DNA from: Isurus oxyrinchus
Taxonomy: Eukaryota
Reading direction: 5' to 3'
NCBI GenBank assembly: GCA_026770705.1
Contig: JANJGN010000026.1
Span: 27,342,001-27,406,000 of the forward strand
DNA length: 64,000 nt
Part shown: positions 6,041 through 51,374 of the stretch, one piece after another
How the letters are laid out: the number at the start of each line of letters is the position of its first letter
How positions within the stretch are numbered: position 1 is the first letter of the stretch
Made by a program: the position numbers and the translations under genes
Notes under the pieces: model-generated
What the model was told of the DNA's origin: nothing
The model's database searches: none
Seen by the model: only the letters and a program-made list of their open reading frames with translations

Positions 6041-7759
6041 AATCACACAAACACACATGTTTGTCTATTACAAAATGTGTCCCATCTCTGCGACCTCTCT
6101 GATAGTCTGTCTGTAATTCTTTCTATCCATCCATCACAATATTATGGAGAGATCCTCCAATGAGCTATTGATGCTAACAGAGTATCAGGGAAGCTGGAAA
6201 AGTTTTCTTTCCTGGGAGATTTAAACAGTTCACAAAGGTTCACAATTTTAAAAAATTAAACTGACTCCAGTGTTGTTGCTGGGTAGATTTGTTTATAAAT
6301 AGGCCTTGTTGACAATGTTAAGGGTTTGAAGTTGGCTTGCAGCCAAGCGGTCAGTACTGAAGAAACAGATCTTTGATTAACTGCACAAACCCCCAGATGC
6401 TTCCTGTAAACAACATTGGACATTCGAGCCTCCATGACTGCAGCCGGCTGGCTTGTTGCCAAATGCTGTGTGGGGCAGATTAGCCTGGATATGAATGAAC
6501 AAAATGGGATTGAGCCATTCAAATAATATTGCTTTCAGTTGCACATAAAAGAAACATTTGAAATGGTATTTCATCCAAGGAAATGTTTTAATGAATGCCG
6601 TGTTCACTATGAGATTAAACACGATCAAAAAATATTAAATTGACCATATACTATTTAATTTATATTATTTCCAAGCAAAAGTCCTTCCAGTTATTAAAGC
6701 CGGTTTATTTGGAACTTCATGAAGTGCGAGAGAGCGAAATTGATTGTCCCAAGTCCTCAGTTTAATGAGATAAGAGGAATGGCAAAAATTAAAAAGAAAT
6801 CATTTTTTTTTAACTTGCTGAATTGCCTTAAACCCGCACAAATTCCTTGAATATTCTCCGAGTTGTGCGCCTCATTTAACCTGAGGGGTCTATTATTCCT
6901 GATTAACACCGTGTACTGTACAGTTTAATTTGTGCTGATTTCGATTATTTAACAGTCTCTCTCATAGCTGCCAATGAGTGGAGAAATTAACAGTTCATGA
7001 CCCGCTTCAGTGGAAGATAAACCATTTATTCTTGTTGATATTGTGTAATATGCCGCAAAGTCCTGATATTCTGTGTTCCCAATACCAGTGAATGGTGGAC
7101 AGCCGGTGACCAATCAAATTAGCTGCAATGATTTGGATGCTGAAGCACAACTTTGCTGATCTCCATGTCCATTGATTCATCAACTTCTCGGTCAAAAGTT
7201 GATGTAAATTTACGTTTCTCTGTAAATTCACTGTTTAATTATCAGGCAGGCGGGCTTCTTTTACAGCTAATTTTCACAGGGCTGTCTTGGGGTCGGGGCA
7301 GTTCGAGAAATGAAAGGAGGGACATTGTATAATGTGAGGAATTTATTCTTATCTCTGTACAGCGATAGCCACCCACTCTGCAATTAGAATCACATTGTTC
7401 ATCTCCCGCATTTAATTACATAAATCAATAATAATTCCTATGACTGATGGTAATTTATTGCTGTAATGCGATAGAGACCCGGAATTGCTGCAAAACAGAC
7501 TGACAGTCCCTTTATTCCCTGATAATGTGATGAAATCCTTTTAGATTCAACCCCTTGTGAAGTAGTGTAGAAATTAATGAACTTAATTTACAATTGAAAT
7601 AGTTATTTTTATGAGCTGATCTTCAACTGGAATTTCACCATTAGAACCAATGGGTACATTACAATGAATCCATTCAGCCAAATATCCCGTTACGGATAAA
7701 AAGCCCACTTTTAGCAATAACCTATTGTAAATATCTGAGTCCATTCTGTTGGGGATGTG

Positions 7760-7850
7760 GAAGGTGGGGCGTGGATCCATTCGCCGCCTCCACCAGGGAA
7801 TCAACAGGCGACGTCTGGAAACCCGCCCCCTTCTGCCTGGTATTTAAATG
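7760..7850 (+). promoter_or_regulatory. IgH V promoter (octamer-less): GC boxes, CRE-like core, TATA
   Basis: GGTGGGGCGTGG ~7762, GACGTC 7810-7815, CCCGCCCC ~7822, TATTTAAAT 7841-7849, ~90 nt upstream of the leader ATG; no ATGCAAAT nearby. Confidence 0.7.
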
Positions 7851-7936
7851 CTGCTCATTGGGACCGGAATCCAACAGTCCGGTAGCTGGTTTGTTCACTG
7901 AGTTCTGGACAGAACAGTTTTCCCCAAATGACCAGA

Positions 7937-7985
7937 ATGATGAGGTCGGCAATTTGTCTCAGTTTGTTGCTGACTTTCTTATCCC
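7937..7985 (+). CDS. IGHV: IgM heavy-chain leader exon (MMRSAICLSLLLTFLS, phase-1 split)
   Basis: Hydrophobic signal peptide ending C|GTGGGT; splices to 8114 giving R-V-Q-S; an additional in-frame ATG lies at 7928. Confidence 0.9.
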
Positions 7986-8113
7986 GTGGGTAGTTTTTAT
8001 TGTCCAAATCTCTCACTGTTACTGTCTCAGTGTTAACCTCTCTCTGGAATGTTACATAGTCAGGAATCATTTCACCAGCATTAACCCTCGAGGTTTTTGA
8101 TATATTTTTACAG

Positions 8114-8419
8114 GTGTCCAGTCGGAGGTTGAGTTGACCCAGCCAGAGGCAGAAACTGGGCGTCCTGGAGGCTCCCTGAGACTGATCTGTAAAACCAACG
8201 GCTTCGATCTTGGCAGCTACCACTTGTTCTGGGTCCGACAGATTCCCGGACAGGGGCTGGAGTGGTTGCTTTATTACTATAGTTCATCGGACAACGGCTA
8301 TGCCCCAGCAATTAAGAACCGATTTACTGCGTCCAAAGACACTTCAAGAAACATCTTCTCCTTGGACATGACGAACCTGAAGACCGAAGACACCGCTATC
8401 TATTACTGCGTAAGAGCGT
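8114..8419 (+). CDS. IGHV: Unrearranged VH segment
   Basis: TTTTTACAG acceptor; [22 protein letters not shown]...[12 protein letters not shown]...RFTASKDTS...[10 protein letters not shown] with canonical Cys/Trp/Cys; open frame. Confidence 0.97.
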
Positions 8420-8458
8420 CACAGCGAGAGGAACCAGGGCTGGACCCGAACAAGAACA
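8420..8458 (+). other. VH recombination signal sequence (23-bp spacer)
   Basis: CACAGCG (8420-8426) + 23 nt + ACAAGAACA (8450-8458). Confidence 0.95.
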
Positions 8459-8815
8459 GATCGAGAGAAACTCAAGAACTTCCATCATAACCTGACGGCC
8501 AGTACCTGTTTTAACTGTAATGATCAGAACCAGACAACAAGCCGCTTCTGACAAAAGTAAAACAGCAAATTTAACAGTAAAACCTAACAAACCTACCGAT
8601 ATAATGGGCTGAGCTTTTGCTGTGTTTATATTTACTGTTAACAGTTTCCGCAATTACAGACCTGGATATAATGCTCATTTTAATATGCCTGATACTTGGG
8701 GGGGATCGCTGTTCATTGAGTTTTGTAAGTTGCTGCATGAATTCTAAACTAGATCAGAAGTAAACGTCTATTTGAAGTGCATATTGAGTGGCAGCACTGA
8801 ACAGAGAGTGGATGC

Positions 8816-8843
8816 GGTTTTTGTGCGGGTGTATTTCACTGTG
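8816..8843 (-). other. D 5' RSS (12-bp spacer)
   Basis: GGTTTTTGT (8816-8824) + 12 nt + CACTGTG (8837-8843), both matching consensus. Confidence 0.97.
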
Positions 8844-8871
8844 ATACTATAGCAGCGGGTACACTGGGTGG
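8844..8871 (+). CDS. IGHD: DH segment, 28 nt (probable germline D1-D2 fusion)
   Basis: ATACTATAGCAGCGGGTACACTGGGTGG between two 12-RSSs; frame 2 YYSSGYTGW, frame 3 TIAAGTLG, frame 1 has a stop. Confidence 0.92.
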
Positions 8872-8899
8872 CACGGCAGTTACTGTGAATGCAAAAACT
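8872..8899 (+). other. D 3' RSS (12-bp spacer)
   Basis: CACGGCA (8872-8878) + 12 nt + GCAAAAACT (8891-8899). Confidence 0.9.
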
Positions 8900-9226
8900 C
8901 CTCAGCACTAATTGAGTCTGCCTGGGTCAGTGCTCGCTTATACAATCCTGTTATATTTACAGTGAAGTATTATTTTTGTCCAGTACTGCCCAAAAACATG
9001 GGTTAAGATGGAAAAGCTGTGATAATTATTCAGTCATCAGTTGGTGATTTCAATAACATCTTCATGTGTTACTCTGTGAATGATAAAACATGAGGGTCAT
9101 TGATGAATAGTTAAATATATCTACAAACGCAAATATAATTTCGTGAAGATTCATCGTGACCTTACTTTGACTCTGACTGATGAATATTTAAATAATGTTG
9201 GATTTTTGTCTTTCTCGTGCAAAGAC

Positions 9227-9265
9227 AGTTATTGTATGGCACAGCCCAGGGAAGGTAACACTGTG
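9227..9265 (-). other. JH RSS (23-bp spacer)
   Basis: AGTTATTGT (9227-9235) + 23 nt + CACTGTG (9259-9265). Confidence 0.92.
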
Positions 9266-9313
9266 ACGCTGAGGGCTACTGGGGACAAGGGACCATGGTG
9301 ACGGTGACTGCAG
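9266..9313 (+). CDS. IGHJ: JH segment (AEGYWGQGTMVTVTA)
   Basis: WGQG motif; CAG|GTAAGA donor in phase with Cmu1. Confidence 0.96.
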
Positions 9314-12300
9314 GTAAGAACCATGCATTGATTTGGTAATTGTTTTACTTGAGTATTTGCTTTACACTTTTGCCTATTTTAATAATTTATTCGTTCACTG
9401 AAACGTGGGTTTGGTGGATTCTGTATAAAGATTTTTTTAACGATGTTTCATGTGATTCTGCTGAAATTGAGTTATTTAATTGCGCTGTGTTTTGACAAAA
9501 AGTACTGCTGAGATTTGTTGTTTATCTGCTGAGAATACTGTGCGGCCGGGTTACTTGAAATATCTAACGTTTGTTAAAACAGTTTGACGTTTCTGCAATG
9601 TTTAATCTCGGTGACATCTAATCGCTGCGGGTTTTACCATCTGTTGCACAAGGGTTTAAATATGTCTGAAATCAAGCCCAATATGAACAAAATATGCTTG
9701 AGTTTCAATGTTAATTTATTGAACATGTTCCGCCTACTCACTATCCATATTTCTGTTTAGTTTAATTATTCATTCATTTAGTGACGAGTGGGTTGTCTGG
9801 ATTCGATATTGAGATTTTATTGCAATGTTACATTGGATTTTGTTGGAAGTGTTTGTAGAATTGAGTTGCTTCTCCATGAAACGGGTTTCAGCCCCTCAGT
9901 GATGTGATTTTGGTGTTTTTCTTCTGAGGAGATTGTGTGTCTGGGTGACTTTAAACAAGTAGAATTTATGAAACGGTTTGACGGTTCTGCATTATTTCTG
10001 CATTGTTTAAACTCGGTGATATTGAGAGGTTACACGTTTTGTAATTGAATGGAAACAGGCTACGCGTTTGTACCTGCTTGAAGAACGATTGTAGGCAGAA
10101 AACAGACCGGTTTCAGGAATGGGGGGAAAGTGTTTAAAGGTGCGTTAGAACATTTTGTGTTTCTTTTACGTGATAATTGCAGATTAAACTAAACTATGGA
10201 TTACGGCGTTTATTCAGAAAATAATTCGTTCCTGCAATTAGAAACAACATAATTAACAAGTTTTCAAATTTTGGAGTAAAATTAATATAATTCAAACAAT
10301 TATGAGGTGGTAACATTTCTCCATATTGACTGAACAGATTTCATATAAACCTAATTGATCATTAATCGCCTTTCACAATTCTGCTGTACACTGCGCACAA
10401 TTAACATGAACGAGAACGTTATTAGGCTGGAAACATTTTGTGATTATGCATGAAAAATTTCAATAAGAATATACTGATTCTACAGAATTGTTCAGTTTAA
10501 CAAGATATTTTGATTGTTTTTATATCCCTAATAACCTTTGCATTGACTTAAAGAGGAGTTCGGCAATATGTCTATCCGGTTATTACATTCTTCCTGTGCA
10601 CCCGTAACCATATTATTCCTTCAATGTCATTGGGATTTGGATAGCGAGATAATTATCACTGATCTAATCTTAAACTGTTTTCTGAGGGGTGGAATTCGCT
10701 GGCAGTAGAGAAATTGTCCTTACATTTTTTTTAACTGTAGGAAGGTGCAGACTGAAAATGAATTGAAATCGACAAGTAAGAGCTTGAAATTCGAACAGAT
10801 TAATTTAATTGCAAACTTTAATATTCGTTTTGATCTTAATAACAACATTCTGTCTCCCATAGCTGTGCTGTACACAGGATAGAATTGGAGGAGAAGAACA
10901 GATTATATCTGAGGTTCATGCTTAATTCTCATTAAATATTAAATTGAAGAACAAAATCTGGAATCAATTTGCTGATTATATTCCAGTGGCGCAGATGATC
11001 TCAATGAATTGTTCTCATCAAGTTTCGTATTGATCAATTTGGATCTTCTTTTAATGGTCAATATGTTTAATAATTAAATTATAGGGATTGTGATCTAGGA
11101 AGCTCTTTTATTGATAATAAGTAACTGCCAGGAACATTTTTTAACATATAGATTTGAGTTAAGACAAGTTTGCTTTAGCAAACAGATGATGTTACAGCTC
11201 ATTGACAGTTAATGCGATATGACCCCGGCCAGATTTGAAAAAAAATTAAAATATTCCACTCATAAATTCGACGTATGAATTACTCGATGAGAATAGATGG
11301 AATTTATGATTTCTCAATGCGTTCAGAAACACGCATAGTTTATAATTTTGTACGTGAAAATAGAGCAGTAGAGGTAATAGTAAATAGTGATTAGATTTAA
11401 GTAAAATTGATATACTTGCCTGAATGTTACCATCTAGTAATTTGAAGTTTATTGTTTAACATTGTTTCAGTGTTAGGTTGATTTAAATAAACCCCAATTA
11501 TTTCATCACGCCCCAAGGAGAAATAAGTTTTCAATTATTGAAAACCATTTTTTTAATATTATAGTGTAGAAATCAGCTAACAAGAAAATGACAAGATAAT
11601 TAACTTACAATATAATATTTGTGATAATTAATTCAACATAAATGAACTCCAACAATCAAGTATATAATGAATGCGAAATCTCAATGAGTGGAGAGAATTT
11701 TTAATTGTATCCAAAATGAATTGAGAAAAGAATACTTTTCTTACTCAGCTGTGCTCAGCTCGATCAGGTGTTTCGCTTCAATGATTTTATTGGTTCTATT
11801 TATGTCTAAAATCAAATCAAATCAGCGGTTAATAGGTTTTCAATGTGAGTGTTTCCTGATTTGTTTAATTCTTACCCGGTCACTGAGTCTCTGTTATGGA
11901 CACCAAATTACACTGAATCTGTAATATTTGATGTGCTCATTTCATACACTGTTTGGAGGTTTCAGACAGACAGGGAGAATTAGATGGCCTTCAAATGGAG
12001 TTTTGAAATGAAAATCAGATTCATTTCAAAGAAGTTATAGAATAATTGTAGTAAATTAAACATTGATTAATTAGAATCAAACAGCTTGAATGAAAGGGAC
12101 AGATTGAACAGATCTATCTGCTGGAACTCACTTGTTGCACCATTTGTGTCTGTTCTGTTCCTGTGCACGTGGTCACTGTGCTGGGACCAGGAATCTTCCT
12201 GACAGGTTGTAAACCTTCTGGTTCAATCTCCCGTATTTCAGGAAGTACAATTTGATTTATTTCTTCAAAAAAACTTGTATCTGTGAGAAATATGAAAGTT

Positions 12301-13129
12301 TGACTGACCAGGCGCCTCAGAAATGAGATACCCAACCCATTGTGATAGTCAGAAAGGACAATTCAGAAACGACAGACAGACTGTCGAAGGAGATTTCATC
12401 GATTTTAAATCAGTGATGTATCTGTCTTGGGAGTGTTCGGTTAGGCAATGCTGTAGCTGACCCGGAGTGCTTGACAGTTCAGTAGAGAATTGGCTTCCTG
12501 TTGAATCCCACCCTTGCACCTGGTGACAGGAGTGTTCTGGGAGAGGAGTGGGGGCTTTAATCCATATCTTAACCTGTCCTGTTCCTGACCTGAGACTCCT
12601 TTCCCCGCAGAGCTCAAACAAACTGAATCAGCATCGAACTAACTGGCTGTGCATCCTCGAGCCAGATCAGTGAAAATAAATTTTTCCATTGCTCCGTTGA
12701 AATGACACATGCTAATTGTTTTTAACAATATTCCTGGAGAGAACATGTATAAATGTCAATTAATTAATTATGTTTAAGCATTTTGAGTATCAGAAAATCA
12801 TTGAATGTGAGTGACCTGAACTTGAGCACAATTTCAGAACAAACAGAATCAGGGAGTGACAGTGAGACTCCAGACAGCAGCGCCTGTTCTGATTTAATCA
12901 GAGACTGCGAGATATTTAAATGACTTAAATGGACAATGACCTGACAATGCTCCAAATAACCAGCCGCGGGGGATTTCGGGAAAAGAAGCCGCTATCGCTC
13001 CATCAAAAATGGAGTTATTGGATTGCCACCTGCAGGGGGAGGAATGAATGACAGAAATGAGAGCATGAGGAGGACATTTGGCCCTTCGACACTGCCCTCC
13101 ATTCAGTAAAATCATGGCTGATCTACCTC

Positions 13130-14172
13130 GACACACTCAGTCTCTTTACCACACACCCTCACTCGTTCACTCTGTCTGTCACATACGCTTTCTCTCACAC
13201 ACATGCACACTCTCCCACATGCACTATTTCTGAAAGACATACACTCTCTCTTTCTCTCTCTTTCACACACAAACTCTCCTTAACATGCACACACTCTGTC
13301 TCTCACACATTGCCTCTCTCTTTCACTCACACTCATACAGACACTCACATTCTCTCATACACACACATTCGCACCTACACACAGTCACACATACGTGCAC
13401 ACTACCTCTTTCACACACACACACATGCACTCACCCTTTCTCACACATGCACTCTCACACACACAATCTCTCTCTCACACACACATACACACGCACATCC
13501 ACTCTCTCTCTCACATACATGCACCCTCTCTCCCACACAAATACACACTCTTAAACATGCACACACTCTCCATTCTCTCACACACATACTGACACATCAC
13601 ACACTCTCTCTCACACACGCACATCCTCATTCTCTCTCTCATGCACACACAGAAACACTAACACATTCCCTCTCAAACATACACACTCTGTNNNNNNNNN
13701 NNNNNNNNNNNNNNNNNNNNNNNNNNNNNNNNNNNNNNNNNNNNNNNNNNNNNNNNNNNNNNNNNNNNNNNNNNNNNNNNNNNNNNNNNNNNNNNNNNNN
13801 NNNNNNNNNNNNNNNNNNNNNNNNTGACACACACCGTGGCTCTCTCTCACACACACTCTTTCTCTCACACTCTTTCTGTCCCACACACACACGTTCTCTC
13901 TCTCACACACTCTATCTCACACTCTTATACAACCTATCACTCACACCCGTACAAACACTCTCCCTCTCTCTCTCTCTGTCTCTCTCTCTCGCACACACAC
14001 ACACACACATACAGTCACTTTCTCTCACACCCAGTCGCTCTCTCACACACACACAAACATTCTCTATCTCAAACATTCTCACACGTATACTCCCTATGAC
14101 ACACACATACATACACACACTCTCTCTCTCTCACACACACACATACAGTCGCTCTCTCTCTCACACACACAG
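13130..14172. repeat. (CA)n/(CT)n low-complexity tract with assembly gap 13692-13824; a second gap follows at 14173-14346
   Basis: Direct inspection; runs of N. Confidence 0.95.
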
Positions 14173-14346
14173 NNNNNNNNNNNNNNNNNNNNNNNNNNNN
14201 NNNNNNNNNNNNNNNNNNNNNNNNNNNNNNNNNNNNNNNNNNNNNNNNNNNNNNNNNNNNNNNNNNNNNNNNNNNNNNNNNNNNNNNNNNNNNNNNNNNN
14301 NNNNNNNNNNNNNNNNNNNNNNNNNNNNNNNNNNNNNNNNNNNNNN

Positions 14347-16110
14347 AACAGGACTAGACAGGGTAGCTGCAGGAAGGATGTTCCCAATGGTGGGAGAGTT
14401 CAGAACCAGGGCTCACATTCTGAGGATATGGGGTAGGCCATTTAGGATTGAGATGAGGAGAACTTTCTTCACCCAGAGAGTGGTGAGCCTGTGGAATTCG
14501 TTACCACAGAAAGTAGTTGAGACCAAAACATTATATGTTTTCAAGAAGGAGTCGGATATAGCTCTTGGGGCGAAATGGATTAAAGGGTCTGGAGAGAAAG
14601 CGGGATCAGGCTATTGAGTTGGATGATCAGCCATGATCATAATGAATGGTGGAGCAGCCTCGAAGGGTTTAATGGCTTACTCCCGCTAATTAAGAAGGGT
14701 TTGTAGAGATAAGCCAGGGAATTACAGGGCAGTAAGTCACACGTCAGTGGTAGGGAAACGATTGGAGAAAATTCTGAAGGAGAGAATACATCTCCACTAG
14801 AAGAGGCAAGGTTTGATCAGGGATAGTCAGCATGACTTTGTCAGAGGAGATGTCATGCCTAACAAATTTGATCGAATTTTTTGAGGAGGTGACCAGGTGT
14901 CTAGATGAGGGTAGTGCAGTTGATGTTGTTTATATGGATTTCAGCAAAGCCTTTGACAAGGTCCCACATGGGAGACTTATAAAGAAGGGAAAGGCACATG
15001 GGATACAGGGTAATTTGATATGGTGGATTCAAAATTGGCTTACCTGTAGTAGGCAGAGGGTGATGACAGAATGATAATTTAGTGACTGGAAACCAGTGTC
15101 CAGTGGCATACCACTGTGCTGGGTCCCCTATTATTTGTCATTTATATAAATGACATAGATGACTATGTGGGGGATAGAATTAGTTAGTATTAGTAAGTTT
15201 GCAAATGACACAAGATTGGCCGGGTGGTTAACAGTGAGGTTGAGTGTCCTGGGCTGCAGGATGATATAGACGGGATAGTCAAATAGGCAGATAAGTGGCA
15301 GATGGAATTTAACCCTGAAAGGTGTGAGGTGATACACTTTGGAAGGAATAATCTGACAAGGAAGTATTCAATGAACAGCATGGCACTAGGAAGTTCTGAG
15401 GAACACAGGGACCTTGGCGTGTGTGTCCATAGATCTCTGAAGACAGAAGGGCATGTTAGTGGGGTGGTGAAAGAGGCATATAGGACACTTGCCTTTATCA
15501 ATCGAGGTATAGGTTACAAAAGTAGGGAGGTCATGTTGGAGTTGTATAAAACCTTAGTGAGGCCACAGCTGGAGTACTGTGTGCATTTCTGGTCGCCACA
15601 TCATAGGAAAGATGTGATTGCACTGGAGAGGATGCAGTGGAGATTCACCAGGATGTTGCCTGGGATGAAACATTTAAGTTATGAAGAGAGGTTGGATACA
15701 CTTGAGTTGTTTTGAGCAGAGAAGATTCAGGGGCGACCTGATCGAGGTGTACAAAATTATGAGGGGCATGGACAGGGTGGATAGGGAGCAACAGTTCCTC
15801 TTAGTTGAAGGGTCAGTCACACAAGAGGGCATAGGTTCAAGATGAGGGGCAGGAGGTTTCGGGGGGATGTGAGGAAAACCTTTTTTACCCAGAGGGTGGT
15901 GACAGTCTGGAATGCACTGCCTTGGAGGATGGTGGAGGCGGGTTGCCTCACATCCTTTAAAAAGTACCAGATGAGCACTTGGTACGTCATAACATTCAAG
16001 GTTATGGGCCAAGTGCTGGTAAATGAGATTAGGTAAGTAGGTCAGGTGTTTCTCACGTGCCGGTGCATACTCAATGGGCCAAAGGGCCTCTTCTGCACTG
16101 TGCGTTTCTG
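14347..16110 (+). mobile_element. Two adjacent CR1 LINE fragments (a 3' end, then RT domain through 3' end)
   Basis: SCLTNLIEFFEEV, VDVVYMDFSKAFDKVPH, LVRPQLEYCVHFWSP, FFTQRVV motifs; multiple stops. Confidence 0.92.
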
Positions 16111-16618: not shown

Positions 16619-16777
16619 ATGGAGAATCAGGACAGGATCAATGGAGAGGAAAAGGAGGAGGCAGAGCCGAATGGAGGAGTCCCCAGCTCGGCTGTGGACA
16701 ACAGGCAACGGAAAGCTGAGCCGGAGCAGAAAATCATCTGGAGAAACATCGCCTTGATGAGCATCCTGCACCTGGGC
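16619..16777 (+). pseudogene. Fragment of a stearoyl-CoA desaturase (SCD5-like) first coding exon
   Basis: MENQDRINGEEKEEAEP...EQKIIWRNIALMSILHLG matches the SCD IVWRN-x-x-LMS-x-LHLG motif preceding TM1, then breaks into CACT/CACC repeats. Confidence 0.7.
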
Positions 16778-16779
16778 AC

Positions 16780-17300
16780 CCTCACTACCACTCTCACTCG
16801 CCCTCACCCTCACTCACTCACCCACCCTCACTTATCCTCACTCACTTACCCACCTTCATTCCCCGTCATTTACTCACCATCAGTTGCTCATTCACCCTAA
16901 CTCACGGACCCTTACACCCTTACACACAGCCTCCTACACACTCATTCACCCACCCTCACCCACCCATCCTTACTCATGCACCCTCACTTATCCTCACTCA
17001 AATTCACTCACCCGCCCATCCTCACTCACCTACATTCACTCACACTCAATAACTCAAACACCGATCCTCACACACCCACTCACCCTCACTCACATACCCA
17101 CACTCACATAACCACCCACTCATATACCCTCATTCAATCACCCACCCTCACTCACTCATCTACCCTCACTCACCCACATTCAGACACCCATCCACGCTCA
17201 CTCACCACCCACTCTCACTTATTCCTTCATTCACCCACGCAACCTCACACACTCAACCACCCACCCTCACTCTGTCAATCATGCACACGCTCACTCACAT
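16780..17300. repeat. C-rich (CACT/CACC)n low-complexity tract
   Basis: Direct inspection. Confidence 0.9.
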
Positions 17301-17399
17301 GATCAGTTTTCCGAAATCGGTGTGTGGGAGGGCGAGAACTCCGGGGACTGGAGTCCTGGAAGCGAGGACTGAGGCCTAGCACTGTTGGAAAGTGGAGCA

Positions 17400-18130
17400 T
17401 GGCCAAGGGAGGTCGAGCGTCGGTGGGAAGGCAGAAAGGCTGGGTTAAAGGGCAGAGAGGTGGGAGGAAAGAGCATAGAGCTGGGGAAAGGGCAGGGAGG
17501 TGGAGGAAAGGGCCGAAAGCCGGGTGGGGGGGTGGGGTGGAAGGGCAAAGAGTAGGGGGAAAGGTCAAAGAGCCGGACGACAGCGCAGAGACCAGTGGAG
17601 TAAGGGCAGAGAGCTGGGGGACAAAAGGCACAGAGCTGGGGGAGAAAGGGCAGAGAGGCGGGATGGGGGGCAAGGGCAGAGAGGCGGGAGGGGGGAAAGA
17701 GCAGAGAGGCGGGATAGGGAAGAGAGGCGGGGGGGCAGGGCAGAGTGGCGGGGAGGGAAAGGGCAGAGTGGCAGGGGTGGGAAGGACAGAGAGGCAGGGG
17801 TAAAGGGCAAGGAAGTGGGAGAGGGAAAGGGCAGAGAGGCAGAGGATGAAAGGGCAGGGAGGGGGCACAGGACAGAGGGGCGGGGGTGGGACGGGCAGAG
17901 AGGCGGGACGAAGGGCAGAGGGCCGTTGGGAAAAGGGCAGAGAGGTGGTGGGGGCAGAGAGGTGGGGCGAAAAGATGAAGAGGCGGGGGGAAGGTCAGAA
18001 AGGTTGAGAGGAGAGGGGGAAAGGCAGAGAGGCAGCTGGATGGAAGGGCAGAAAGCTGGTGGGGGGTGAAGGGCAAAGAGGCGAGTGAAAGTGCAGAGAG
18101 TGGGGCTTTTGTGGGGAGAGCTGGCCGAAA
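17400..18130 (+). repeat. G-rich polypurine repeat (GGGCAGAG units, GAGCTGGGG)
   Basis: At least 10 GGGCAGAG copies, six AGCT sites, many G3-G7 runs, strong G over C skew on +. Confidence 0.9.
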
Positions 18131-19117
18131 GCAATTGCGAGCCCAGGCCCCAGGTGCCCTGGACCCCACTCTCACTATCTGTCCCTCTCTCTCTTTCTCT
18201 CCCTCATTGTTTCTCCTCCTCCTGAAACCCTTTCCATTCCCAGGGAAAGACACTCAGTGCCTGGGATAAAAGGGAGACAATGTTTCTGTGCACTTCCCCC
18301 CGGCTCCCTGCGCCTTTCTCCATCCGATGTTCGCTGACCCTCCAATTACAGCCTGTTTGTCTCCCATTTTTACTGCTGATAGGCCCGCTGGTCAGCCTAT
18401 CAGCAGCTAACAGGATAGGAGGGGCTGTGATTGGAGGGGCAGCTAGGATAGAAGCGGAGAATAGGCAGGAATGTGGAGTTAATGCCACAATCAGATCAGC
18501 CATGATCGTATTGAATGATGGAGGAGGCTCGAGAGGCCGAATGACCTATTCCTGCTCCTAATCCGCATGTTCATATGTACATACAATTGGAAAATGTCAT
18601 AATTACTGTAACTGGTATTCAATTTAGAGATCTATGGTCATTATATAGTTACCGTTACAAAGGTACTTTCGAGGCGTTATTGCTGTTCTTTGTTTTGGGG
18701 GAACGTGGAGAGGGGAGGGGGCATCCGTCAATTTGAACAGAGCCAATTTCTAAACTGCAATGATAAAAATGACCGGACAACTTCTCTACCACCAAGTGCT
18801 GTTGATTGAGAAATAACTGGTGGCCGAAATAATGGGTAAAATCCTCTGCTCTTCCATTTTAATCCAATGAAAGGTACGTCATTCAGATGGCATCACAATG
18901 TTCTCTTTTAGTAATGGGATAGAGGCGGAAAAAGAGGTGTGGGCTTCTAAAGAGAGGGTCACCAAATGATGGAAATAATAAATGAACAAATGTGGATGTG
19001 GGTTTTAGTTGGAATATATTAGGATATGTTTATACTTATAGTCAAATTTTGAGTTGTTTGGTTACTTAATGATCACAAATCAGAGTCTAACTTATTCAAT
19101 CGGCCATTCTTTCCCAG

Positions 19118-19417
19118 TGACACCGTCTTCACCCACTCTCTACAGCCTGGTCTCCTCCTGTCAGCAACAGAACACCGACGGCTCCGTCACCTACGGCTGT
19201 TTGGCGATGGACTATTCCCCAGAAATAACCAGCTTGACTTGGAAGAAAGATGGGCAGCCGATCACCACTGGATTTAAGACTTACCCGTCAGTGAGGAACC
19301 AGAAGGGAACCTATACCCTGAGCAGCCAGTTAACCATCACCGAGTTAGTGTGGGAATGCAGCAAAATCAAGTGCGAGGTTCGACACAGCGGCTCAGACAA
19401 GAGCGTTGAAATGCAAT
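19118..19417 (+). CDS. IGHM: IgM Cmu1 exon
   Basis: CCCAG acceptor; [14 protein letters not shown]...[19 protein letters not shown]...CEVRH; T|GTAAGT donor. Confidence 0.96.
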
Positions 19418-19630: not shown

Positions 19631-19945
19631 GTACTGGACCTGTCATCCCTCCAACTGTTCTCCTCACCGTGAGTTCCCGGGAAGAAATCACAACCAACAA
19701 ATTTGCAACAGCCGTCTGTTCAATCATCAATTTCCGACCAAATTCAATGACCATGAAGTGGCTGAAGAATGGACAACCCATGGATTCAGGAATTGTCACC
19801 TCTCCCGCCTTTGAAGTGAACGGGAACTTCTCGGCGACCAGTCGGCTGAAAGTCTCCGCTGGGGAATGGTTCACCGACGCGGTCTATACCTGTCAGGTCA
19901 CTCACCAAGGGGTCACCCAAAGTCGAAACGCCACCAAGTGTGAGG
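19631..19945 (+). CDS. IGHM: IgM Cmu2 exon
   Basis: GAAG acceptor; PPTVLLT...[14 protein letters not shown]...YTCQVTH; G|GTAAGA donor. Confidence 0.95.
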
Positions 19946-20343: not shown

Positions 20344-20652
20344 AACATTCCCAATGCAGCGATCCCACAATTACTCCACTGCCACCGCCAATAGAACAGG
20401 TTTTACTAGAGGCGACGGTGACATTAACCTGCATCGTTTCTAATGCCCCTTATGGAATCCTCGTGTCCTGGACCCAAGAAAAGAAGCCTTTGAAATCAGA
20501 GATTGCTGTCCAACCAGGAGAGGATCACAACAGCGTGGTCAGCAACGTAAACATCTCGACACAAGCCTGGCTGAGTGGGGCTGAGTTCTACTGCATGGTG
20601 AGCCATCAGGATCTGCCGACTCCTTTAAGAAGTTCCATCCACAAGGAACCAG
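20344..20652 (+). CDS. IGHM: IgM Cmu3 exon
   Basis: CACAG acceptor; [24 protein letters not shown]...[17 protein letters not shown]; G|GTGAG donor. Confidence 0.95.
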
Positions 20653-21342: not shown

Positions 21343-21734
21343 TTAAAGACCCGCGGGAACCATCTGTGTCTGTCCTCCTGCCCTCAGCAGAAGATGTCTC
21401 TGCTCAGAGATTCGTCTCCCTCAGCTGCTTAGTGAGAGGTTTCTCCCCGCGAGAGATCTTCGTCAAGTGGACCCTCAATGACAAGCCGGTGAATCCCGGG
21501 AACTACAAGAACACCGAGGTGTTGGCTGAGAATGACAATCGCTCCTTCTTCATGTACAGCCTGTTATCCATTGCAGCGGAGGAGTGGGCCAGCGGCACTT
21601 CTTACTCCTGTGTGGTGGGACATGAAGCAATCCCCTTGAAGATCATCAACAGAACGGTTGATAAATCCAGCGGTAAACCAAGTTTTGTGAACATTTCCCT
21701 TGCACTGATGGACACCATTAATTCATGTCAATGA
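21343..21734 (+). CDS. IGHM: IgM Cmu4 exon plus secretory tailpiece
   Basis: TGCAG acceptor; [17 protein letters not shown]...YSCVVGHEA; tail [20 protein letters not shown] with N-glycan site and penultimate Cys; internal membrane-form donor G|GTAAA after 21672. Confidence 0.97.
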
Positions 21735-24743: not shown

Positions 24744-24871
24744 ATTCCACAGACCGCATCTGGACTGAAGACTCTGAGGATGATAACGGCAATATCTGGA
24801 CAACCGCTTCCACATTCATCATCCTATTCTTCCTGAGCATGTGCTACAGCACTGCCGTCACTCTGGTGAAG
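24744..24871 (+). CDS. IGHM: IgM TM1 exon (DSTDRIWTEDSEDDNGNIWTTASTFIILFFLSMCYSTAVTLVK)
   Basis: CCGTAG acceptor in phase with the Cmu4 internal donor; acidic connecting peptide and CART-type TM motif; AAG|GTGAGA donor. Confidence 0.95.
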
Positions 24872-28901: not shown

Positions 28902-31740
28902 CCATAAGACCATAAGACATAGGAGCAGAAATGAGGCCATTCGGCCCATCCAGTCTGCTCTGGCTTTCAATCATGGCTGATAAGTTTCTCAACTCCATTC
29001 TCCAGCCTTCTCCCCATAACCTTTGATCTCCTTACCAATCAAGAACCTATCTATCTCGGTCTTAAATACACTCAATGACCTGGCCTCCACAGCCTTCTGT
29101 GGCAGTGAATTCAATAGATTCACCACTCTCTGGCTAAAGAAGTTTCCCCTCATCTCTGTTCTAAAATGTCTTCCCTTTACTCTGAGGCTGTGCCCTCGGG
29201 TCCTTTGCTCTCCTACTAATGGAAACATCTTCCCCACGTCCACTCTATCTAGGCCTTTCAGTATTCTGTAAGTTTCAATCAGTTCCCCCCTCATCCTTCT
29301 AAACTCCATCGAGTACAGACCCAGAGTCCTCAAACGTTCCTCATATGTTAAGCCTTTCATTCCTGGGATCGTTCTCGTGAATCTCCTCTGGGCCCTTTCC
29401 AGGGTCAGCATATCCTTCCTGAGATACGGGGCCAAAACTTGCTCACAATATTCTAAATGTGGTCTGACCAGAGCCTTATAAAGCCTCAGCAGCACATCCC
29501 TGCTTTTATATTCTAGTCCTCTCGAAATAAATGCCAACATTGTATTTGCCTTCCTAACTACCGACTCAACCTGCAAGTTAACTTTAAGAGAATCCTGGAG
29601 GAGGACGCCCTAGTCCCTTTGCACTCCAGATTTCTGAATTCTCTCCCCATTTAGAAACTAGTCTATGCCTCTATTCCTCCTACCAAAGTGCATGACCTCA
29701 GACTTCCCCACATTGTATTCCATCTGCCACTTCTTTGCCCATTCTCCTAACCTGTTCCAATCCTTCTGCAGCCTCCCCACCTCCTCAATACTACCTGTCC
29801 CTCCACCTATCTTTGTATCATCTGCAAACTTAGCCAGGATGCCCTCAGTTCCTTCATCTAGATCATTAATGTATAAAGTGAAAAGTTGTGGTCCCAACAC
29901 TGACCCTTGTGCTACTCCACTAGTCACCGGCCACCATCCTGAGAAGGACCCCCTTATCCCCACTCTCTGCTCCTGCCAGATAGCCAATCTTCTATCCATG
30001 CTAGTACCTTGCCTCTGACACTGTGGGCTCTTATCTTACTGAGCAGCCTCCTGTGCGGCACCTTGTCAAAGGCCTTCTGAAAGTCCAAGTAGATAACATC
30101 CATTTGCTCTCCTTTGTCTAACCTACTCGTTACCTCCTCAAAGAATTCTAACAGATTTGTCAGGCATGACCTGCCCTGGATGAAACCATGCTGACTTTGC
30201 CCTTTTTTATCATGCACTTCCAAGTATTCTGAAATCTCATCCTTAATAATGGACTCTAAAATCTTACCGATGACCAAGGTCAGGCTAATCCGCCTGTAAT
30301 TTCCCGTCTTTTACCTCACTCCCTTCTTAAATAAGAGGGTTACATTAGCGATTTTCCAGTTCTCTGGAACCCTCCCTGACTCCAGTGATCCCTGAAAGAT
30401 CACAACTAACGCCTCCACTATCTCTTCAGCTATCTCCTTCAGAACTCTGGGGTGTAATCCATCTGGCCCAGGTGATTTACCCACCTTCAGACCTTTTAGT
30501 TTTCCTAGTACCTTCTTCTTGGTAATGGCCACCATACTCACTCTGCCCCCCGACTCTCTTGAACTTTGGGTATGTTACTCGTGTCTTCCACTGTGAAGAT
30601 TGACGCAAAGTACCTATTCAGTTCCTCCGCCATTTCTTTGGTCCCCACTACTCCTTCTCCAGCGTCATTTTCCAGTGGCCCAATGTCCACTTTTGCCCCT
30701 CTCTTACCCTTTATATTTCTAACAAAAACTCTTACAATCTTCTTTTATATTACTGGCTAGTTTACCCTCATATTTAATCTTCTCCCTTCTTATTTCTTTA
30801 TTAGTTGTCCTCTGTTGGTCTTTGTAGGATTCCCAATCCCCTGGCTTCCCACTGCTCTTTGCCGCATTGTATGCTTCTCTTTAGCTTTTATGCTGTCCCT
30901 GACTTTCCTTGTCAGCCATGGTTACCTCGTCCTCCCTTTAGTATGCTTCTTCTTGCTATGGATGAATTTTTGCTGTGTCTCCCAAATTACCCCAGAAACT
31001 CCTGCTGTTCCACTGTCTTTCCTGCTAGGCTCATCTCCCAGTCAATTCTGGCCACCTCCTCCCTCATGCCTCTGTAGTTGCCTTTATTCAACTGTAATAC
31101 CGTTACGTCTGATTCCAGCTTTTCCCTCTCAAATTGCAGGGTAAATTCTATCATTTTATGGTCACTTCCTCCTAAGGGTTCCTTCACCTTAAGCTCCCTT
31201 ATCAAACTTGCCTCATTACACATCATTTACTCTAGAATTGCCTGTTCCCTAGTGGGCTCCACCACAAGCTGCTCCAAAAAGCCATCTCGTAGACATTCCA
31301 CAAATTCCTTTTCTTGGGATCCACTACCAACCTGATTTTCCCAGTCTACCTGCATATTGAAATCCCCCATGATCACTGTAACCTTGCCTTTCTTACACGC
31401 CTCTTCTATCTCCTGGTGTATCTTGTGCCCCACATCCTGACTACTGTCCGGAGGCCTGTACATAACTCCCATTATGTTTTTTTTTACCTTTGCGTTCCTC
31501 AACTCTACCCACGCAGATTCTACATCATCTGACCCTACGTCATTTCTTGCTATCGATTTAATTTCATTTCTTACTAACAAAGCAACCCCACCCCCTCTGA
31601 CAACCTGCCTATCTTTTCAATAGGATGTATACCCTCGGATATTTAGCTCGCACTCCTGATCCCCTTCCAGCCATGTCTCCGTGATGCCCACCACATCATA
31701 CCTGCCAATTTCAAACTGCACCACAAGCTCATTTACCTAT
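28902..31740 (-). mobile_element. CR1 LINE, ~2.8 kb, endonuclease through 3' tail, relatively young
   Basis: GDFN, KSPGPDGLHPRVLKE, YLDFQKAFDKVPH, GSVLGP, KFADDTK, LVRPHLEYC motifs; (CCATAAGA)n terminal microsatellite. Confidence 0.95.
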
Positions 31741-43957: not shown

Positions 43958-44442
43958 TGTTGAAAACAAAGAAAACTGCGGATGCTGGAAATCTAAAACA
44001 AAAACAGAATTACCTGGAAAAACTCAGTAGGTCTGGCAGCATCGGCGGAGAAGAAAAGAGTTGACGTTTCGAGTCCTCATGACCCTTCGACAGAACTTGA
44101 TTTCGAGTCCAGGAAAGAGTTGAAATATAAGCTGGTTTAAGGTGTGTGGGGGGGGGGGGGGGGGGGGGGGGGAAGGAGAGAGAGAGAGAGACAGAGGTGC
44201 TTGTGTAGACAAACAAGCAGTGATATCACTGCTTGTTTGTCTACACAAGCACCTCTGTCTCTCTCTCTCTCTCCTTCCCCCCCCCCCCCCCCACACACCT
44301 TAAACCAGCTTATATTTCAACTCTTTCCTGGACTCGAAATCAAGTTCTGTCGAAGGGTCATGAGGACTCGAAACGTCAACTCTTTTCTTCTCCGCCGATG
44401 CTGCCAGACCTACTGAGTTTTTCCAGGTAATTCTGTTTTTGT
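43958..44442. mobile_element. Penelope-like fold-back insertion forming a near-perfect palindrome; 14-bp TSD
   Basis: Arms 43998-44224 and 44225-44442 centred on GATATC; CTGAGGGATAATAT at 43944-43957 and 44443-44456. Confidence 0.85.
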
Positions 44443-46169: not shown

Positions 46170-47940
46170 CATTGAGCAGGGACAGGAGAAATTATCAAAG
46201 GGAATGAAGAAATGGCAGAGGCATTGGACAAATATTTTATGTCTGCCTTCACAGTAGAAGACACAAGTTTTATACCAGAAATAGGTGGTAACATAGGGCT
46301 AAAAGTCGTGAGGAAATTAATATCAGCAGAGAAAAAGGATTGGCAAAACGTAAGGGAGTAAAATCCGACAGATCTCCAGGACATGATGGCCTACACCCTT
46401 GGAATTCTAAAAGAGAGAGCTGCAGAGATAATGGATCTGTTGGCTATGATTTTCCAAAATTCATTTTGGGAACAGTCCCATTAGATTGGAAGTTGGTAAA
46501 GATTACATTGTTTTTAAAGGTAAGAGGGAGAGAGAAAACAGTGAACTACAGGCCTGTTGGCCTAACGTCAGTTGTTCATAAAATGCTGGAATCCATTATT
46601 AAGAAAGTCTTCACAATACACTTAGAAAAGCATCACATCATGAGAACAAGTCAACATGGTTTTACTAAAGGGTAATCCTGTTTGACAAATTTGTTTGAGT
46701 TTTTTGAGGATTTAACTAGTAGGACAGATCAAGGGGAACCAGTTGATGTAGTATACCTGGTCTTCCAAAAGGCATTCGATAAGGTGCCACACAAAAGGTT
46801 TAAAGTCAAAATAGGGGTTTATGGGTTTGGGGGTAATATATTAACATGGATAGAGGATTGGTTAATGGACAGAAAACAGAGAGTGGGCATAAAAAGGGCT
46901 TTTTCAAGTTGGCAGGCAATGAATAGTGGAGTGCCGCAAGGGTCAATGCTGTGGCCTCATATATTTACAATCTACATTGATGACTTAGATGAAGAGACAG
47001 TGATTAATATATCAAAGTTTGCTGATGATGCCAATATGGGTGGAAAGGTAAGCTGTTGGGGGGACACAAAGAGGCTGCAAAGAGATATAGACAGGTTAAG
47101 TGATTGGGCAATAAGATGGCAAATGGAACATAATATAGGAAAGGGTGAAGTTCTTCACTTTGGTGGTAAGAATAGAAAAGCAGAATATTTTTGAAAAGGT
47201 ATGAAACTTCCAAGTGTTGATATTCGAAGGGACTTGGGTCTGCTTGTACAAGAGATGCAGAAAGTTAGTATGCAGCTGGAGCAAGCAATCAGGAAGGCAA
47301 ATGGCAATTTGGCCTTTATTGCAATGGGATTGGAGTACAAGAATAAAGAAGTCTAGCTGCAATTGCACGAGGTTTGAGATGTGAGACCACACCTGAAATG
47401 CTATGTGCAGTTTTGTTCTCTACATTTATGAAAGGATATACTTACATTGGAGGTGGTACAGTAAAGGTTCACTAAATTGGTCCCTGGGATGAGGAGGTAG
47501 CCATATGATGAGAGGCTGAGCAAATTGGGCTCATATTCTCTGGAGTTTAGAAGAATGAAAGATGATCTTATTGAAACCTGCAAAATTCTGAAGGGGTTGA
47601 CAGGTAGACATTGAGAGATTGTTTCCCCTGGCTGGGGAATCTCATGGGGCATGGTCTCTGGATAAGGGGCTGATCATTCAGGACTAAGATGAGGAGAAAT
47701 TTCTTCACTCAAAGTGCTACGAGTCTTTGAAATTCTCTACCCCAGAGTGTTGTGGATGCTCCATCACTCAACACATTTTAAGCAGTGATAGACAGATTTT
47801 TGGTCTCTCAGTGAATCAAGAGATAAGGGGAGCAGGCAGCAAAATGGAGTTGAAGCCCGAGATCAGCCATGATTGTATTGAATGGCAGAGCAGGCTCGAT
47901 GGGCCATGTGGTCTACTCCTATTGCCAATTCTTGTGTTCA
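46170..47940 (+). mobile_element. CR1 LINE (decayed)
   Basis: NYRPVGLTSVV, FQKAFDKVPH, GVPQGS, KFADD motifs. Confidence 0.9.
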
Positions 47941-48739
47941 TTGGAAGAGTTCAGGATGCCAAGGTCAGAGTGGGAGTGGGACAGAGAATTAAAATGACAA
48001 GTGACCTGAAGCTCAGGGTCAAACCTCTAGACAGAATGGAGGTTGTTCCACAAAGTGATCACCCAATTTGTGCTTGATCTTCCCAATGTAGAGCAGACCA
48101 CATGGTGAGCAGTGAATACAGTAACTAAATTACAAGTATTGCAAGTAAATCACTATTTGTTTCATCCCTCAAAATCTTCAAGAAAGACTAAAGGTCACAA
48201 AGTAAAGCAAAAGTGATTGCTGGAATATTAAATCTCTCCTAGTTATAGGAATTATTAAATTCAGTGCAATTTAAGTGGAACTGGCATCGTCAGGATGTAC
48301 ATGGTCCAGTCCTGGATGTGATTAACAGCAAAATCGAACTCCTGCCGTCACTCAGGGAGAGATGGTGGTAATGGCACTGAACTAGTCATCCAGAAGTTCA
48401 AGCTAATACTCTAGGAACACTACAACAGTTGAGAAAATGTAATATCAGTTAATTAATGAATCTGGAACTGAAATCTAATCTCAGTAATGGTGATCAAGAA
48501 ACTTCCACCGATTGTCATAAAAACAAATCTAGTTCACTCATGTTTCTTGAGGAAATGAAACCTGTCAGCCGACATGTGATTCCTGACCCAAGGCAATGTG
48601 GTTGACTCTTAACTTCCCTCTGAATTGGCCACACAAGACACTCACTTGTAGCAATTAGGGATGGGCAACAAATGCTGGGCTTGCCAGTGACGTCAACATC
48701 CCAAGAAAGAATACATTTTTTAAATAGTTTTGAATTCGC

Positions 48740-49880: not shown

Positions 49881-50249
49881 TTAGAACGGGAATAAAGGAG
49901 TGTGAGAGAACCCACAAAAACACAGGCAGATTATGAAATTGAGCGGAATGAATCTTGTAGATTGTGGGGCCGGAGCAAAGGGTGGGCAGGGCTTCCAAAT
50001 CCCCATAACCAAGAGAGAAAATGATTGATTAATTTTATTCTCACTCTGGAGGACTGAATGCAGCCAGAGTAGAGGGAGGGAGAAAACTGGGGGTGCAGGA
50101 AAGAAATGGTGGAGATGGCGAGATGGGTTTGGATTTCAGCCCAGGGAGGAGGGAGTGTGTGGGACGGAGGTTTACAGCTTTGAGAGAACAAGAGAGGGAA
50201 AAAATGTTCCATAGAAACTACAATTGTCTGTTCTGAATTTCTACCTGTA

Positions 50250-51250: not shown

Positions 51251-51374
51251 TAATAATTCCTGTAGCTGGACTGTAGTTTAATATTTTGATATGTGTTAAA
51301 TATAACAGGTTTTTTTCAAACACTGTGTCAGGTATTTGATTTCCCCAAGCTAAGAGGAGACTAATTGATGTACT

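What the first reader, a model, noticed from the sequence alone, without database searches (positions are those of the whole stretch)
8816..8899. Shark IgM cluster with a single 12/12 D that looks like a germline-joined D1-D2 (V-DD-J)
Seen: only one D lies between V and J. It is 28 nt, has 12-RSSs on both sides, and sits ~425 bp from V and ~395 bp from J. Established: canonical elasmobranch IgM clusters are V23-12D1(22/23)-12D2-12-23J with short Ds a few hundred bp apart, and germline-joined clusters (VD-, VDD-, VDJ) exist. Inference: the D splits into a D1-like half (ATACTATAGCAGCGGGT) and a D2-like half ((AC)ACTGGGTGG), keeping D1's 5' RSS and D2's 3' RSS. This is what a RAG coding joint in the germline would leave. 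GGGT|AC could even be a P-nucleotide addition. The cluster still obeys the 12/23 rule, so it would rearrange in two steps like a tetrapod IgH, with a hard-wired YYSSGYTGW CDR3 core.
Basis: partly seen in the sequence, partly recalled or inferred. Interest (0 to 1): 0.78.

Follow-up and report, generated by a model that had tools for sequence, protein, structure and literature searches.

The report
Shark IgM cluster with pre-fused D
This is an intact-looking shark IgM antibody gene cluster that carries one long D piece instead of the usual two, most likely because the two were joined in inherited DNA; it is one more layout of a pre-joining already known in sharks.

Summary
Observation confirmed. 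The window holds one IgM minilocus: leader 7928-7985, V 8114-8419 with 23-RSS, a single 28-nt D (8844-8871), J 9266-9313 with 23-RSS, four Cmu exons and TM1. The D has a perfect 5' 12-RSS. Its 3' 12-RSS is weak (CACGGCA, 4 of 7), and an overlapping 22-spacer reading uses the same nonamer. No second D lies between V and J.

The germline D1-D2 joint is the best reading, about 0.75, but only half of it was tested.
- For: paralog contigs from DNA runs begin to align exactly at 8863. Just before that point they carry their own heptamer plus four D letters, so the 3' half and flank behave as D2 and the D2-J spacer.
- Not settled: I saw no D1 sequence from a two-D cluster. The runs were too shallow to show this copy's junction in other animals.

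The scan has already noted the same V-DD-J layout on other DNA of this genome, at three other IgM clusters (unchecked notes).

Germline joining in shark Ig genes, a germline D1-D2 fusion in IgNAR type III, and somatic V-DD-J intermediates are all in print. I file it as a new member of a known kind, of modest interest.

The parts
7928..7985 (+). Leader exon (ATG to GT donor)
   Evidence: Read. It splices in phase to the V exon, giving ...FLSR/VQSEV, as in the horned-shark V hit P0005.
8114..8419 (+). VH exon, open, with both conserved Cys and WVRQ
   Evidence: Pfam V-set, E 1.1e-16. Best protein hits are shark VH at 67-81% identity.
8420..8458 (+). V 23-RSS (CACAGCG / 23 / ACAAGAACA)
   Evidence: RSS scan
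8459..8815 (+). V-D spacer; has multi-copy paralogs
   Evidence: Paralog contigs at about 85-90% identity tile 8389-8606, 8579-8784, 8643-8772 and 8699-8855 (table 8).
8816..8843 (+). D 5' 12-RSS, perfect nonamer and heptamer
   Evidence: the only match in the window, 0 mismatches
8844..8871 (+). Single 28-nt D. Proposed D1-derived part is 8844 to about 8859-8862; D2-derived part runs from about 8860-8863 to 8871.
   Evidence: Paralog alignment starts at 8863, preceded by its own heptamer (tables 7 and 8).
8872..8899 (+). D 3' 12-RSS (CACGGCA / 12 / GCAAAAACT), weak heptamer
   Evidence: score 4+7
8862..8899 (+). Overlapping heptamer-like CACTGGG / 22 / same nonamer; a cryptic or chance signal that begins inside the D
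   Evidence: score 5+7
8900..9226 (+). D-J spacer; has multi-copy paralogs
   Evidence: Contigs cover 8863-9051, 8952-9307, 8992-9263 and 9003-9304 (table 8).
9227..9265 (+). J 23-RSS (nonamer AGTTATTGT / 23 / heptamer CACTGTG as read on +)
9266..9313 (+). JH, open in the ...YWGQGTMVTVTA frame, followed by a GT donor
19118..19417 (+). Cmu1 exon
   Evidence: Pfam C1-set, 1.2e-15; splice sites read
19631..19945 (+). Cmu2 exon
   Evidence: Pfam C1-set, 4.3e-17
20344..20652 (+). Cmu3 exon
   Evidence: Pfam C1-set, 8.7e-10
21343..21734 (+). Cmu4 exon with secretory tail and stop codon
   Evidence: Pfam C1-set, 4.2e-21. Hits to shark and chimaera Ig heavy chain fragments.
24744..24871 (+). TM1 exon (acidic stretch plus hydrophobic span)

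Best explanation
This is an inherited IgM heavy-chain minilocus of a shark. Earlier notes of the scan say catshark.

Its D1 and D2 were joined in the germ line by an ordinary RAG coding joint. That event removed D1's 3' 22/23-RSS, the D1-D2 spacer and D2's 5' 12-RSS. It left one 28-nt D that keeps D1's 5' 12-RSS and D2's 3' 12-RSS.

The cluster looks functional: V, J, four Cmu exons and TM1 are open with normal splice sites.

In lymphocytes it should need two joins instead of three (D to J, and V to D), each obeying the 12/23 rule. One junction is lost, which leaves a partly fixed CDR3 core.

Shown here:
- the anatomy of the cluster;
- that there is only one D;
- that the 3' part from 8863 onward is homologous to D2 and its downstream spacer in paralogs.

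Inferred:
- that the 5' part is D1;
- that RAG made the joint;
- that it happened in the germ line;
- that the cluster is used.
For: 1. Signal grammar is V23 / 12-D-12 / 23J, with one D only.

2. V-to-J coding distance is 846 nt, made of two spacers (424 and 394 nt). This fits a two-D cluster that has lost one spacer. Nurse-shark one-rearrangement products are likewise shorter than germline by about one spacer (PMC2435157, passages).

3. Breakpoint on the D2 side:
   - In X12 a paralog contig aligns from 8863 on. Its loose letters just before end in CACTGTG plus ATAT.
   - X2 record 20 (203 letters) aligns 8863-9051 with 14 loose letters before it.
   - So in other clusters the letters from 8863 on lie 4 nt after a 5' heptamer, as a separate D2.

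4. Paralog contigs tile from the V 3' end through the V-D spacer to 8855, and from 8863 through the D-J spacer into J. None of the 32 listed pieces bridges 8856-8862 (table 8).

5. A germline VDJ-joined paralog is present in 4 of 4 DNA runs. Between V and J it carries first a GCAGC-containing stretch and then ATACTGGGGTGG. That is the same order of motifs as in this D (table 5c).

6. At most 2-4 letters at the junction are unassigned, and GT|AC is palindromic. So there is little or no N addition. Germline-joined shark genes are reported to show trimming and P nucleotides (PMC2193153, passages).

7. Earlier notes, unchecked by me:
   - sister clusters have a 395-base D2-J stretch, against 394 here;
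   - three more V-DD-J IgM clusters lie on the same chromosome.
Against: - No D1 sequence from a two-D cluster was seen, so the identity of 8844 to about 8860 with D1 is untested.
- The 30 loose letters before the paralog D2 match the window's own 5' RSS region at 22 of 30 positions when lined up by the heptamer (my count by eye). D1 and D2 5' flanks are therefore alike, and a short flank cannot tell them apart.
- Contigs with a D-J-joined form share the window's 5' flank 8750-8843. If they come from V-D1-D2J clusters, that flank would be D2-type. I could not tell which cluster type they come from.
- The laid runs are shallow. At 8780 every laid contig in X2 (21 of 21) differs from the window, and nearly all the depth in the other three runs does too. 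No listed piece spans the junction, so presence in other animals or tissues is not shown.
- The 3' heptamer is poor (4 of 7).
- No expression data. No protein with 82% identity or more to this V was found among 11 hits.
Confidence: 0.75

Rival explanations
1. Somatic one-rearrangement intermediate (V-DD-J) from a lymphocyte clone, captured by the assembly.
For: V-DD-J is a documented somatic intermediate in nurse-shark thymocytes and B cells (PMC2435157, passages). My read laying could not show the junction in independent DNA.
Against: - An assembly consensus follows the majority of nuclei, and a lymphocyte clone would be a small minority (established knowledge; the tissue of this assembly is unknown to me).
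- The junction has little or no N addition.
- The same layout is noted at three other clusters of this assembly (unchecked).
Confidence: 0.05
2. One D produced without RAG: either a deletion or unequal crossing-over between D1 and D2 regions, or a D2 that gained about 15 nt.
For: D1-type and D2-type 5' signals are similar (22 of 30 by eye), which could support homologous exchange.
Against: - Homologous exchange between the two 5' signals would leave one D, not two coding parts end to end with both inner signals removed exactly.
- The D length (28 nt) and motif order match a D1+D2 product (table 5c).
Confidence: 0.08
3. The element is a D1 only (18 nt, 8844-8861) with a 22-spacer 3' signal (CACTGGG at 8862), and D2 has been lost. 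The cluster could then not join D to J under the 12/23 rule.
For: The 22-spacer reading scores higher than the 12-spacer one (5+7 against 4+7). Earlier notes describe D1 of this genome as 12/22.
Against: The letters from 8863 on are D2 coding sequence in paralogs, 4 nt after their own heptamer. The downstream flank is the paralogs' D-to-J spacer.
Confidence: 0.03
4. Assembly collapse that dropped the D1-D2 spacer.
For: IgM clusters are highly multi-copy here: paralog contigs have word depths of tens to hundreds in shallow runs.
Against: A collapse would not end exactly at two heptamer borders and leave a clean 12/12 D. No N or repeat lies near it; the nearest N run is at 13692.
Confidence: 0.04

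Closest known systems
Germline-joined IgM clusters of horned shark, skates and others (VD-J, VD-DJ, VDD-J, VDJ)
   Same: Cluster-type IgH locus in which a RAG-type coding joint is fixed in inherited DNA. Joined forms are derived from open clusters (PMC5192425; PMC2193153; PMC4279169; passages only).
   Different: In the passages I saw, V is part of every listed joint. Here V and J are both still open and only D1-D2 are joined. The cluster therefore still rearranges twice.
Nurse-shark IgNAR type III cluster (germline D1-D2 fusion)
   Same: Two D segments are fused in the germ line, while V and J (and there D3) stay unrearranged. The result is fewer joins and restricted CDR3 diversity (PMC4622739, passage).
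   Different: - Different isotype: IgNAR with three Ds, against IgM with two.
- Early-life expression is shown for type III and is unknown here.
Somatic V-DD-J intermediates in nurse-shark lymphocytes
   Same: Identical layout and the same presumed chemistry (PMC2435157, passages).
   Different: Those are found in thymocyte and B-cell DNA only. This one stands in a genome assembly, and the same layout is noted at other clusters.
Bony-vertebrate IgH grammar, V23 / 12-D-12 / 23J
   Same: Same signal grammar and same two-step logic (described for mouse in PMC2435157, introduction).
   Different: Here it is one V, one D and one J in a minilocus, not a translocon. No common descent is shown.

Membership tests
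Elasmobranch IgM minilocus | V-set exon with 23-RSS, J with 23-RSS, four C1-set exons with secretory tail, TM exon, all on one strand within about 17 kb | tested here: met
Germline-joined shark Ig cluster (D1-D2 joint) | One D only between V and J, flanked by 12-RSS on both sides; the inner RSS pair and one spacer are absent | tested here: met
   The 3' heptamer is weak, and an alternative 22-spacer reading exists.
Germline-joined shark Ig cluster (D1-D2 joint) | The 3' half and 3' flank are homologous to D2 and the D2-J spacer of unjoined clusters | tested here: met
   loose end at 8863 (X12), record 20 (X2), and contigs tiling 8863-9307
Germline-joined shark Ig cluster (D1-D2 joint) | The 5' half and 5' flank are homologous to D1 and the V-D1 spacer of unjoined clusters | tested here: inconclusive
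   contigs tile from V to 8855, but no D1 with its 3' signal was seen. D-J-joined contigs share the 5' flank and their cluster type is unknown.
Germline-joined shark Ig cluster (D1-D2 joint) | The junction shows coding-joint processing (trimming, P letters, no target-site duplication) | tested here: inconclusive
   GT|AC is palindromic, and 8860-8862 can also be read as D2 with one change. Settling this needs D1's germline end.
Germline-joined shark Ig cluster (D1-D2 joint) | Present in non-lymphoid DNA and in several individuals | tested here: inconclusive
   the best runs hold 0.21 of the words, and no listed contig spans the junction.
IgNAR type III | IgNAR isotype (NAR V, three Ds, five C domains) | tested here: not met
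   The V is a VH-type V-set exon and is followed by four C1-set exons with a secretory tail. It is an analogue, not a member.
Somatic rearrangement intermediate | Found only in lymphocyte DNA, usually with N additions | not testable with these tools
The junction has 0-4 unassigned letters.

The most novel reading that the evidence does not exclude
V-DD-J clusters are a fixed, expressed sub-family of catshark IgM genes. At least four are noted on this chromosome.

They rearrange with the same two-step 23 / 12-12 / 23 grammar as bony-vertebrate IgH. That would make them a living example of how a one-D, 12/12 grammar can arise from a two-D cluster by a single germline D-D joint.

In this copy the joint also created a heptamer-like CACTGGG, 22 nt before the nonamer. 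This could give RAG a second, competing cut site inside the D.
Probability: 0.15. Interest if true: 0.55.

Novelty: new member of a known kind. Interest (0 to 1): 0.3.

Why it matters
It adds a layout (V open, D1-D2 joined, J open) to the catalogue of germline-joined shark IgM clusters, alongside the D1-D2 fusion already known for IgNAR type III.

Suppose several such clusters in one genome prove to be expressed. They would then show how much junctional diversity a shark gives up at some loci. They would also offer a natural model of a minilocus with tetrapod-like recombination grammar.

On present evidence it points to no new mechanism.

Tried and rejected
- **Scan of metagenome contigs for a J stretch.** 0 hits. 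I did not use the second scan, because a degenerate J pattern would also match human JH.
- **Earlier notes.** The look-up by sequence was blank (which means nothing per the operators). One word look-up was blank.
- **Papers likely to print D1/D2 sequences.** Four papers were not held: Kokubu 1988, Lee 2008, Hsu 2006 and Rumfelt 2004. PMC2191167 is held only as a short text without the terms.
- **Catshark-specific IgM D literature.** None found in the library.
- **Prior print of the layout.** In the passages I read, I found no mention of a germline V-DD-J IgM cluster. The searches were made. This covers the held library only.
- **Supplements.** They are closed and I did not ask for them. Table S1 of PMC12227049 (Ig loci of catshark) and the supporting figures of PMC2435157 (D sequences, junctions) may bear on novelty and on D1/D2 identity.
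- **Similarity between the V-D and D-J spacers.** None was found.
- **Exact promoter octamer in 7000-8000.** None was found.
- **Rejected readings.** D1-only with a 22-RSS, assembly collapse and a somatic clone; see the rival explanations.

Full report
**What is there**

The window holds one complete immunoglobulin heavy-chain minilocus on the + strand.
- A leader exon (7928-7985) splices to a VH exon (8114-8419). The VH exon is open and is a Pfam V-set domain (E 1.1e-16).
- A word search with the V exon gave 11 proteins, all V domains:
  - Scyliorhinus torazame, 80 and 81% identity (2 proteins);
  - Chiloscyllium punctatum, 71-78% (3);
  - Heterodontus, 73%;
  - Rhincodon, 67%;
  - two unnamed proteins, 61-62%;
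  - two snake proteins, 50-57%.
- So this is a shark VH. Earlier notes of the scan call the genome a catshark. I did not verify the species.
- J is at 9266-9313, with a GT donor.
- About 9.8 kb downstream lie four open C1-set exons with normal splice sites. The last one carries a secretory tail.
- A TM1 exon is at 24744-24871.
- No other V-D-J copy is in the window.

**The signals**

A strict scan of both strands found 5 RSS-like sites in 64 kb. The criteria were CAC, heptamer at least 5 of 7, nonamer at least 6 of 9, and sum at least 13. Three of the five are:
- the V 23-RSS (8420-8458);
- the D 5' 12-RSS (8816-8843, perfect at 7+9);
- the J 23-RSS (9227-9265).

The perfect 12-RSS is the only match in the window even with 3 mismatches allowed. 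The expected number at that loose threshold is 0.94, so the zero mismatches carry the weight.

The D coding stretch is 28 nt (8844-8871). It lies 424 nt after V and 394 nt before J.

Its 3' signal is CACGGCA / 12 / GCAAAAACT (4+7). 43 sites in the window score as well for a 12-spacer, so it counts only by position.

An overlapping reading uses the same nonamer: CACTGGG at 8862 with a 22-nt spacer. It scores 5+7.

**Test of the two-halves idea: what the runs allow**

The one available window on paralogs was the read tools.

The look-up of sequencing runs gave 24 runs. The best held only 0.21 of the sampled words.

I laid 4 of these 24 on 7900-9400 at 80% likeness. All four are kept as Logan contigs. 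X2, X12 and X15 are organism A, from three samples and three studies. X4 is organism C.
- Contigs laid: X2 144, X12 137, X15 201, X4 122.
- Most are 80-95% alike, so they are paralogs.
- The runs are shallow. At 8780 every one of 21 contigs in X2 carries another letter than the window, and nearly all the depth in the other three runs does too.
- Of 624 pieces only 32 are listed, and none of those bridges 8856-8862.
- So this laying says nothing about whether this copy's junction exists in other animals.

**Test of the two-halves idea: what the paralogs show**

1. In X12 one contig aligns from 8863 on, with 40 loose letters before. The 30 shown end in CACTGTG followed by ATAT.
2. In X2, record 20 (203 letters) aligns 8863-9051 with 14 loose letters before.
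3. So in other clusters the letters that start at 8863 lie four letters behind a 5' heptamer.
4. Listed paralog contigs tile 8389-8606, 8579-8784, 8643-8772 and 8699-8855 on the V side. On the J side they tile 8863-9051, 8952-9307, 8992-9263 and 9003-9304.
5. A joint 8408 to 9277 with the same 34 letters between stands in 4 of 4 runs. It is a germline VDJ-joined paralog. Its middle carries first a GCAGC-containing stretch and then ATACTGGGGTGG, the same order of motifs as in this D.
6. Joints 8843 to 9276, with 24-25 other letters between, stand in 4 of 4 runs. These are D-J-joined paralogs.

**Results that cut the other way**

- I never saw a D1 with its 3' signal. The 5' half is assigned to D1 only by position.
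- Lined up by the heptamer, the 30 loose letters before the paralog D2 agree with the window's own 5' signal region at 22 of 30 positions (counted by eye). D1-type and D2-type 5' flanks are therefore alike over this short span.
- The D-J-joined contigs share the window's 5' flank 8750-8843. If they come from V-D1-D2J clusters, which are noted in this genome, that flank would be D2-type. If they come from V-DDJ clusters, it would be D1-type. I cannot tell which.
- A joint 8850 to 9021 (X2, X15) is unexplained.

**Junction**

The window has GTAC at 8859-8862, where the paralog D2 has ATAT. Two readings fit.
- D1 ends in ...GGGT, AC is a two-letter P addition (GT|AC is a palindrome), and D2 lost four letters.
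- D1 ends in ...GGG, D2 lost one letter, and 8862 later changed.

Either way, no more than a few letters are unassigned. That fits joints made without much N addition. Germline-joined shark genes are reported to show trimming and P letters (PMC2193153, passages).

**Mechanism**

The best reading is a RAG coding joint between D1's 3' 22/23-RSS and D2's 5' 12-RSS in a germ-line cell, fixed and inherited. The remaining grammar, V23 / 12-D-12 / 23J, allows D-to-J and V-to-D joins under the 12/23 rule. CDR3 then has two junctions instead of three and a partly fixed core. D frame 2 gives YYSSGYTGW, frame 3 is open and frame 1 has a stop. The weak 3' heptamer may lower D-to-J efficiency; that point is inference.

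**Known context**

- Reviews list partly or fully joined shark IgH clusters as VD-J, VD-DJ and VDJ (PMC5192425; PMC4279169), and as VDD-J and VD1-D2J (PMC2193153). I saw passages only.
- In those passages V is part of every listed joint.
- V-DD-J is described as a somatic one-rearrangement intermediate in nurse shark (PMC2435157, passages).
- A germline D1-D2 fusion with V and J open is in print for the nurse-shark IgNAR type III cluster (PMC4622739, passage).
- IgH clusters of catshark lie near TCR alpha/delta (PMC12227049, passages). This fits the NAR-TCR notes just upstream of this window.

**Earlier notes of this scan**

The same V(23)-(12)DD(12)-(23)J layout was noted at three other IgM clusters of this chromosome:
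- s1-871175, 0.76 Mb beyond the window's end, 25-nt D, intact;
- s1-871681, 1.9 Mb beyond, dead;
- s1-300790, 10.6 Mb beyond, complete.

Sister clusters are said to have a 395-base D2-J stretch, against 394 nt here. I could not check these notes. If they hold, they argue against a somatic artefact and lower the novelty.

**Verdict**

- It is a new member of a known kind, of modest interest.

Noticed in passing
window 8408-9277 (paralogs seen in runs X2, X12, X15, X4): A germline VDJ-joined IgM paralog stands in 4 of 4 DNA runs, including organism C. It has the same 34 letters between V and J, and they are in frame.
   Followed up: partly
window 8843-9276 (paralogs seen in runs): D-J-joined paralogs occur in 4 of 4 runs: a 12-RSS, then 24-25 letters unlike this D, then J. 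At least three junction versions are present (table 5c).
   Followed up: no
window 8850-9021: A contig joint skips 170 nt in X2 and X15. In X2, 255 unlike letters follow after 9049. It may be a D1 followed by a D1-D2 spacer that shares a 29-nt patch with the D-J spacer. Unexplained.
   Followed up: no
window 13061-14614: A long low-complexity tract lies in the J-C intron. It reads as His/Thr/Ser/Leu repeats in several frames. It holds the two N runs, 13692-13824 and 14173-14346.
   Followed up: no
window 14817-15712: Reverse-transcriptase-like open stretches (a retroelement fragment) lie inside the J-C intron. Similar RT-bearing copies are at 28992-31616 (-), 46292-47191 (+) and 53419-55169 (-).
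   Followed up: no
window 16700-18270: A GC-rich (0.547) low-complexity tract lies about 1 kb upstream of Cmu1 and is open in several frames on both strands. Another reader noted it as switch-like.
   Followed up: no
window 44027-44413: Two overlapping open stretches on opposite strands give nearly the same 91-aa peptide. This implies an inverted repeat centred near 44220.
   Followed up: no
window 48658-51278, 58446-59423, 62410-63235: C2H2 zinc-finger arrays lie on both strands downstream of the IgM cluster. One is a 326-aa open stretch.
   Followed up: no
protein P0020: A 112-aa protein filed under Salmonella enterica, on a 478-base contig, is 100% identical to 26% of this Cmu4 exon. It is probably shark DNA contaminating a bacterial assembly.
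   Followed up: no
proteins P0006, P0007: Two gene models read past the V end. The bamboo-shark model (P0006) continues into YYSNW... The whale-shark model (P0007) continues through ...DWGGSLHYWGQ... into J. They look like germline VD- or VDJ-joined genes with D1-like and D2-like motifs.
   Followed up: no
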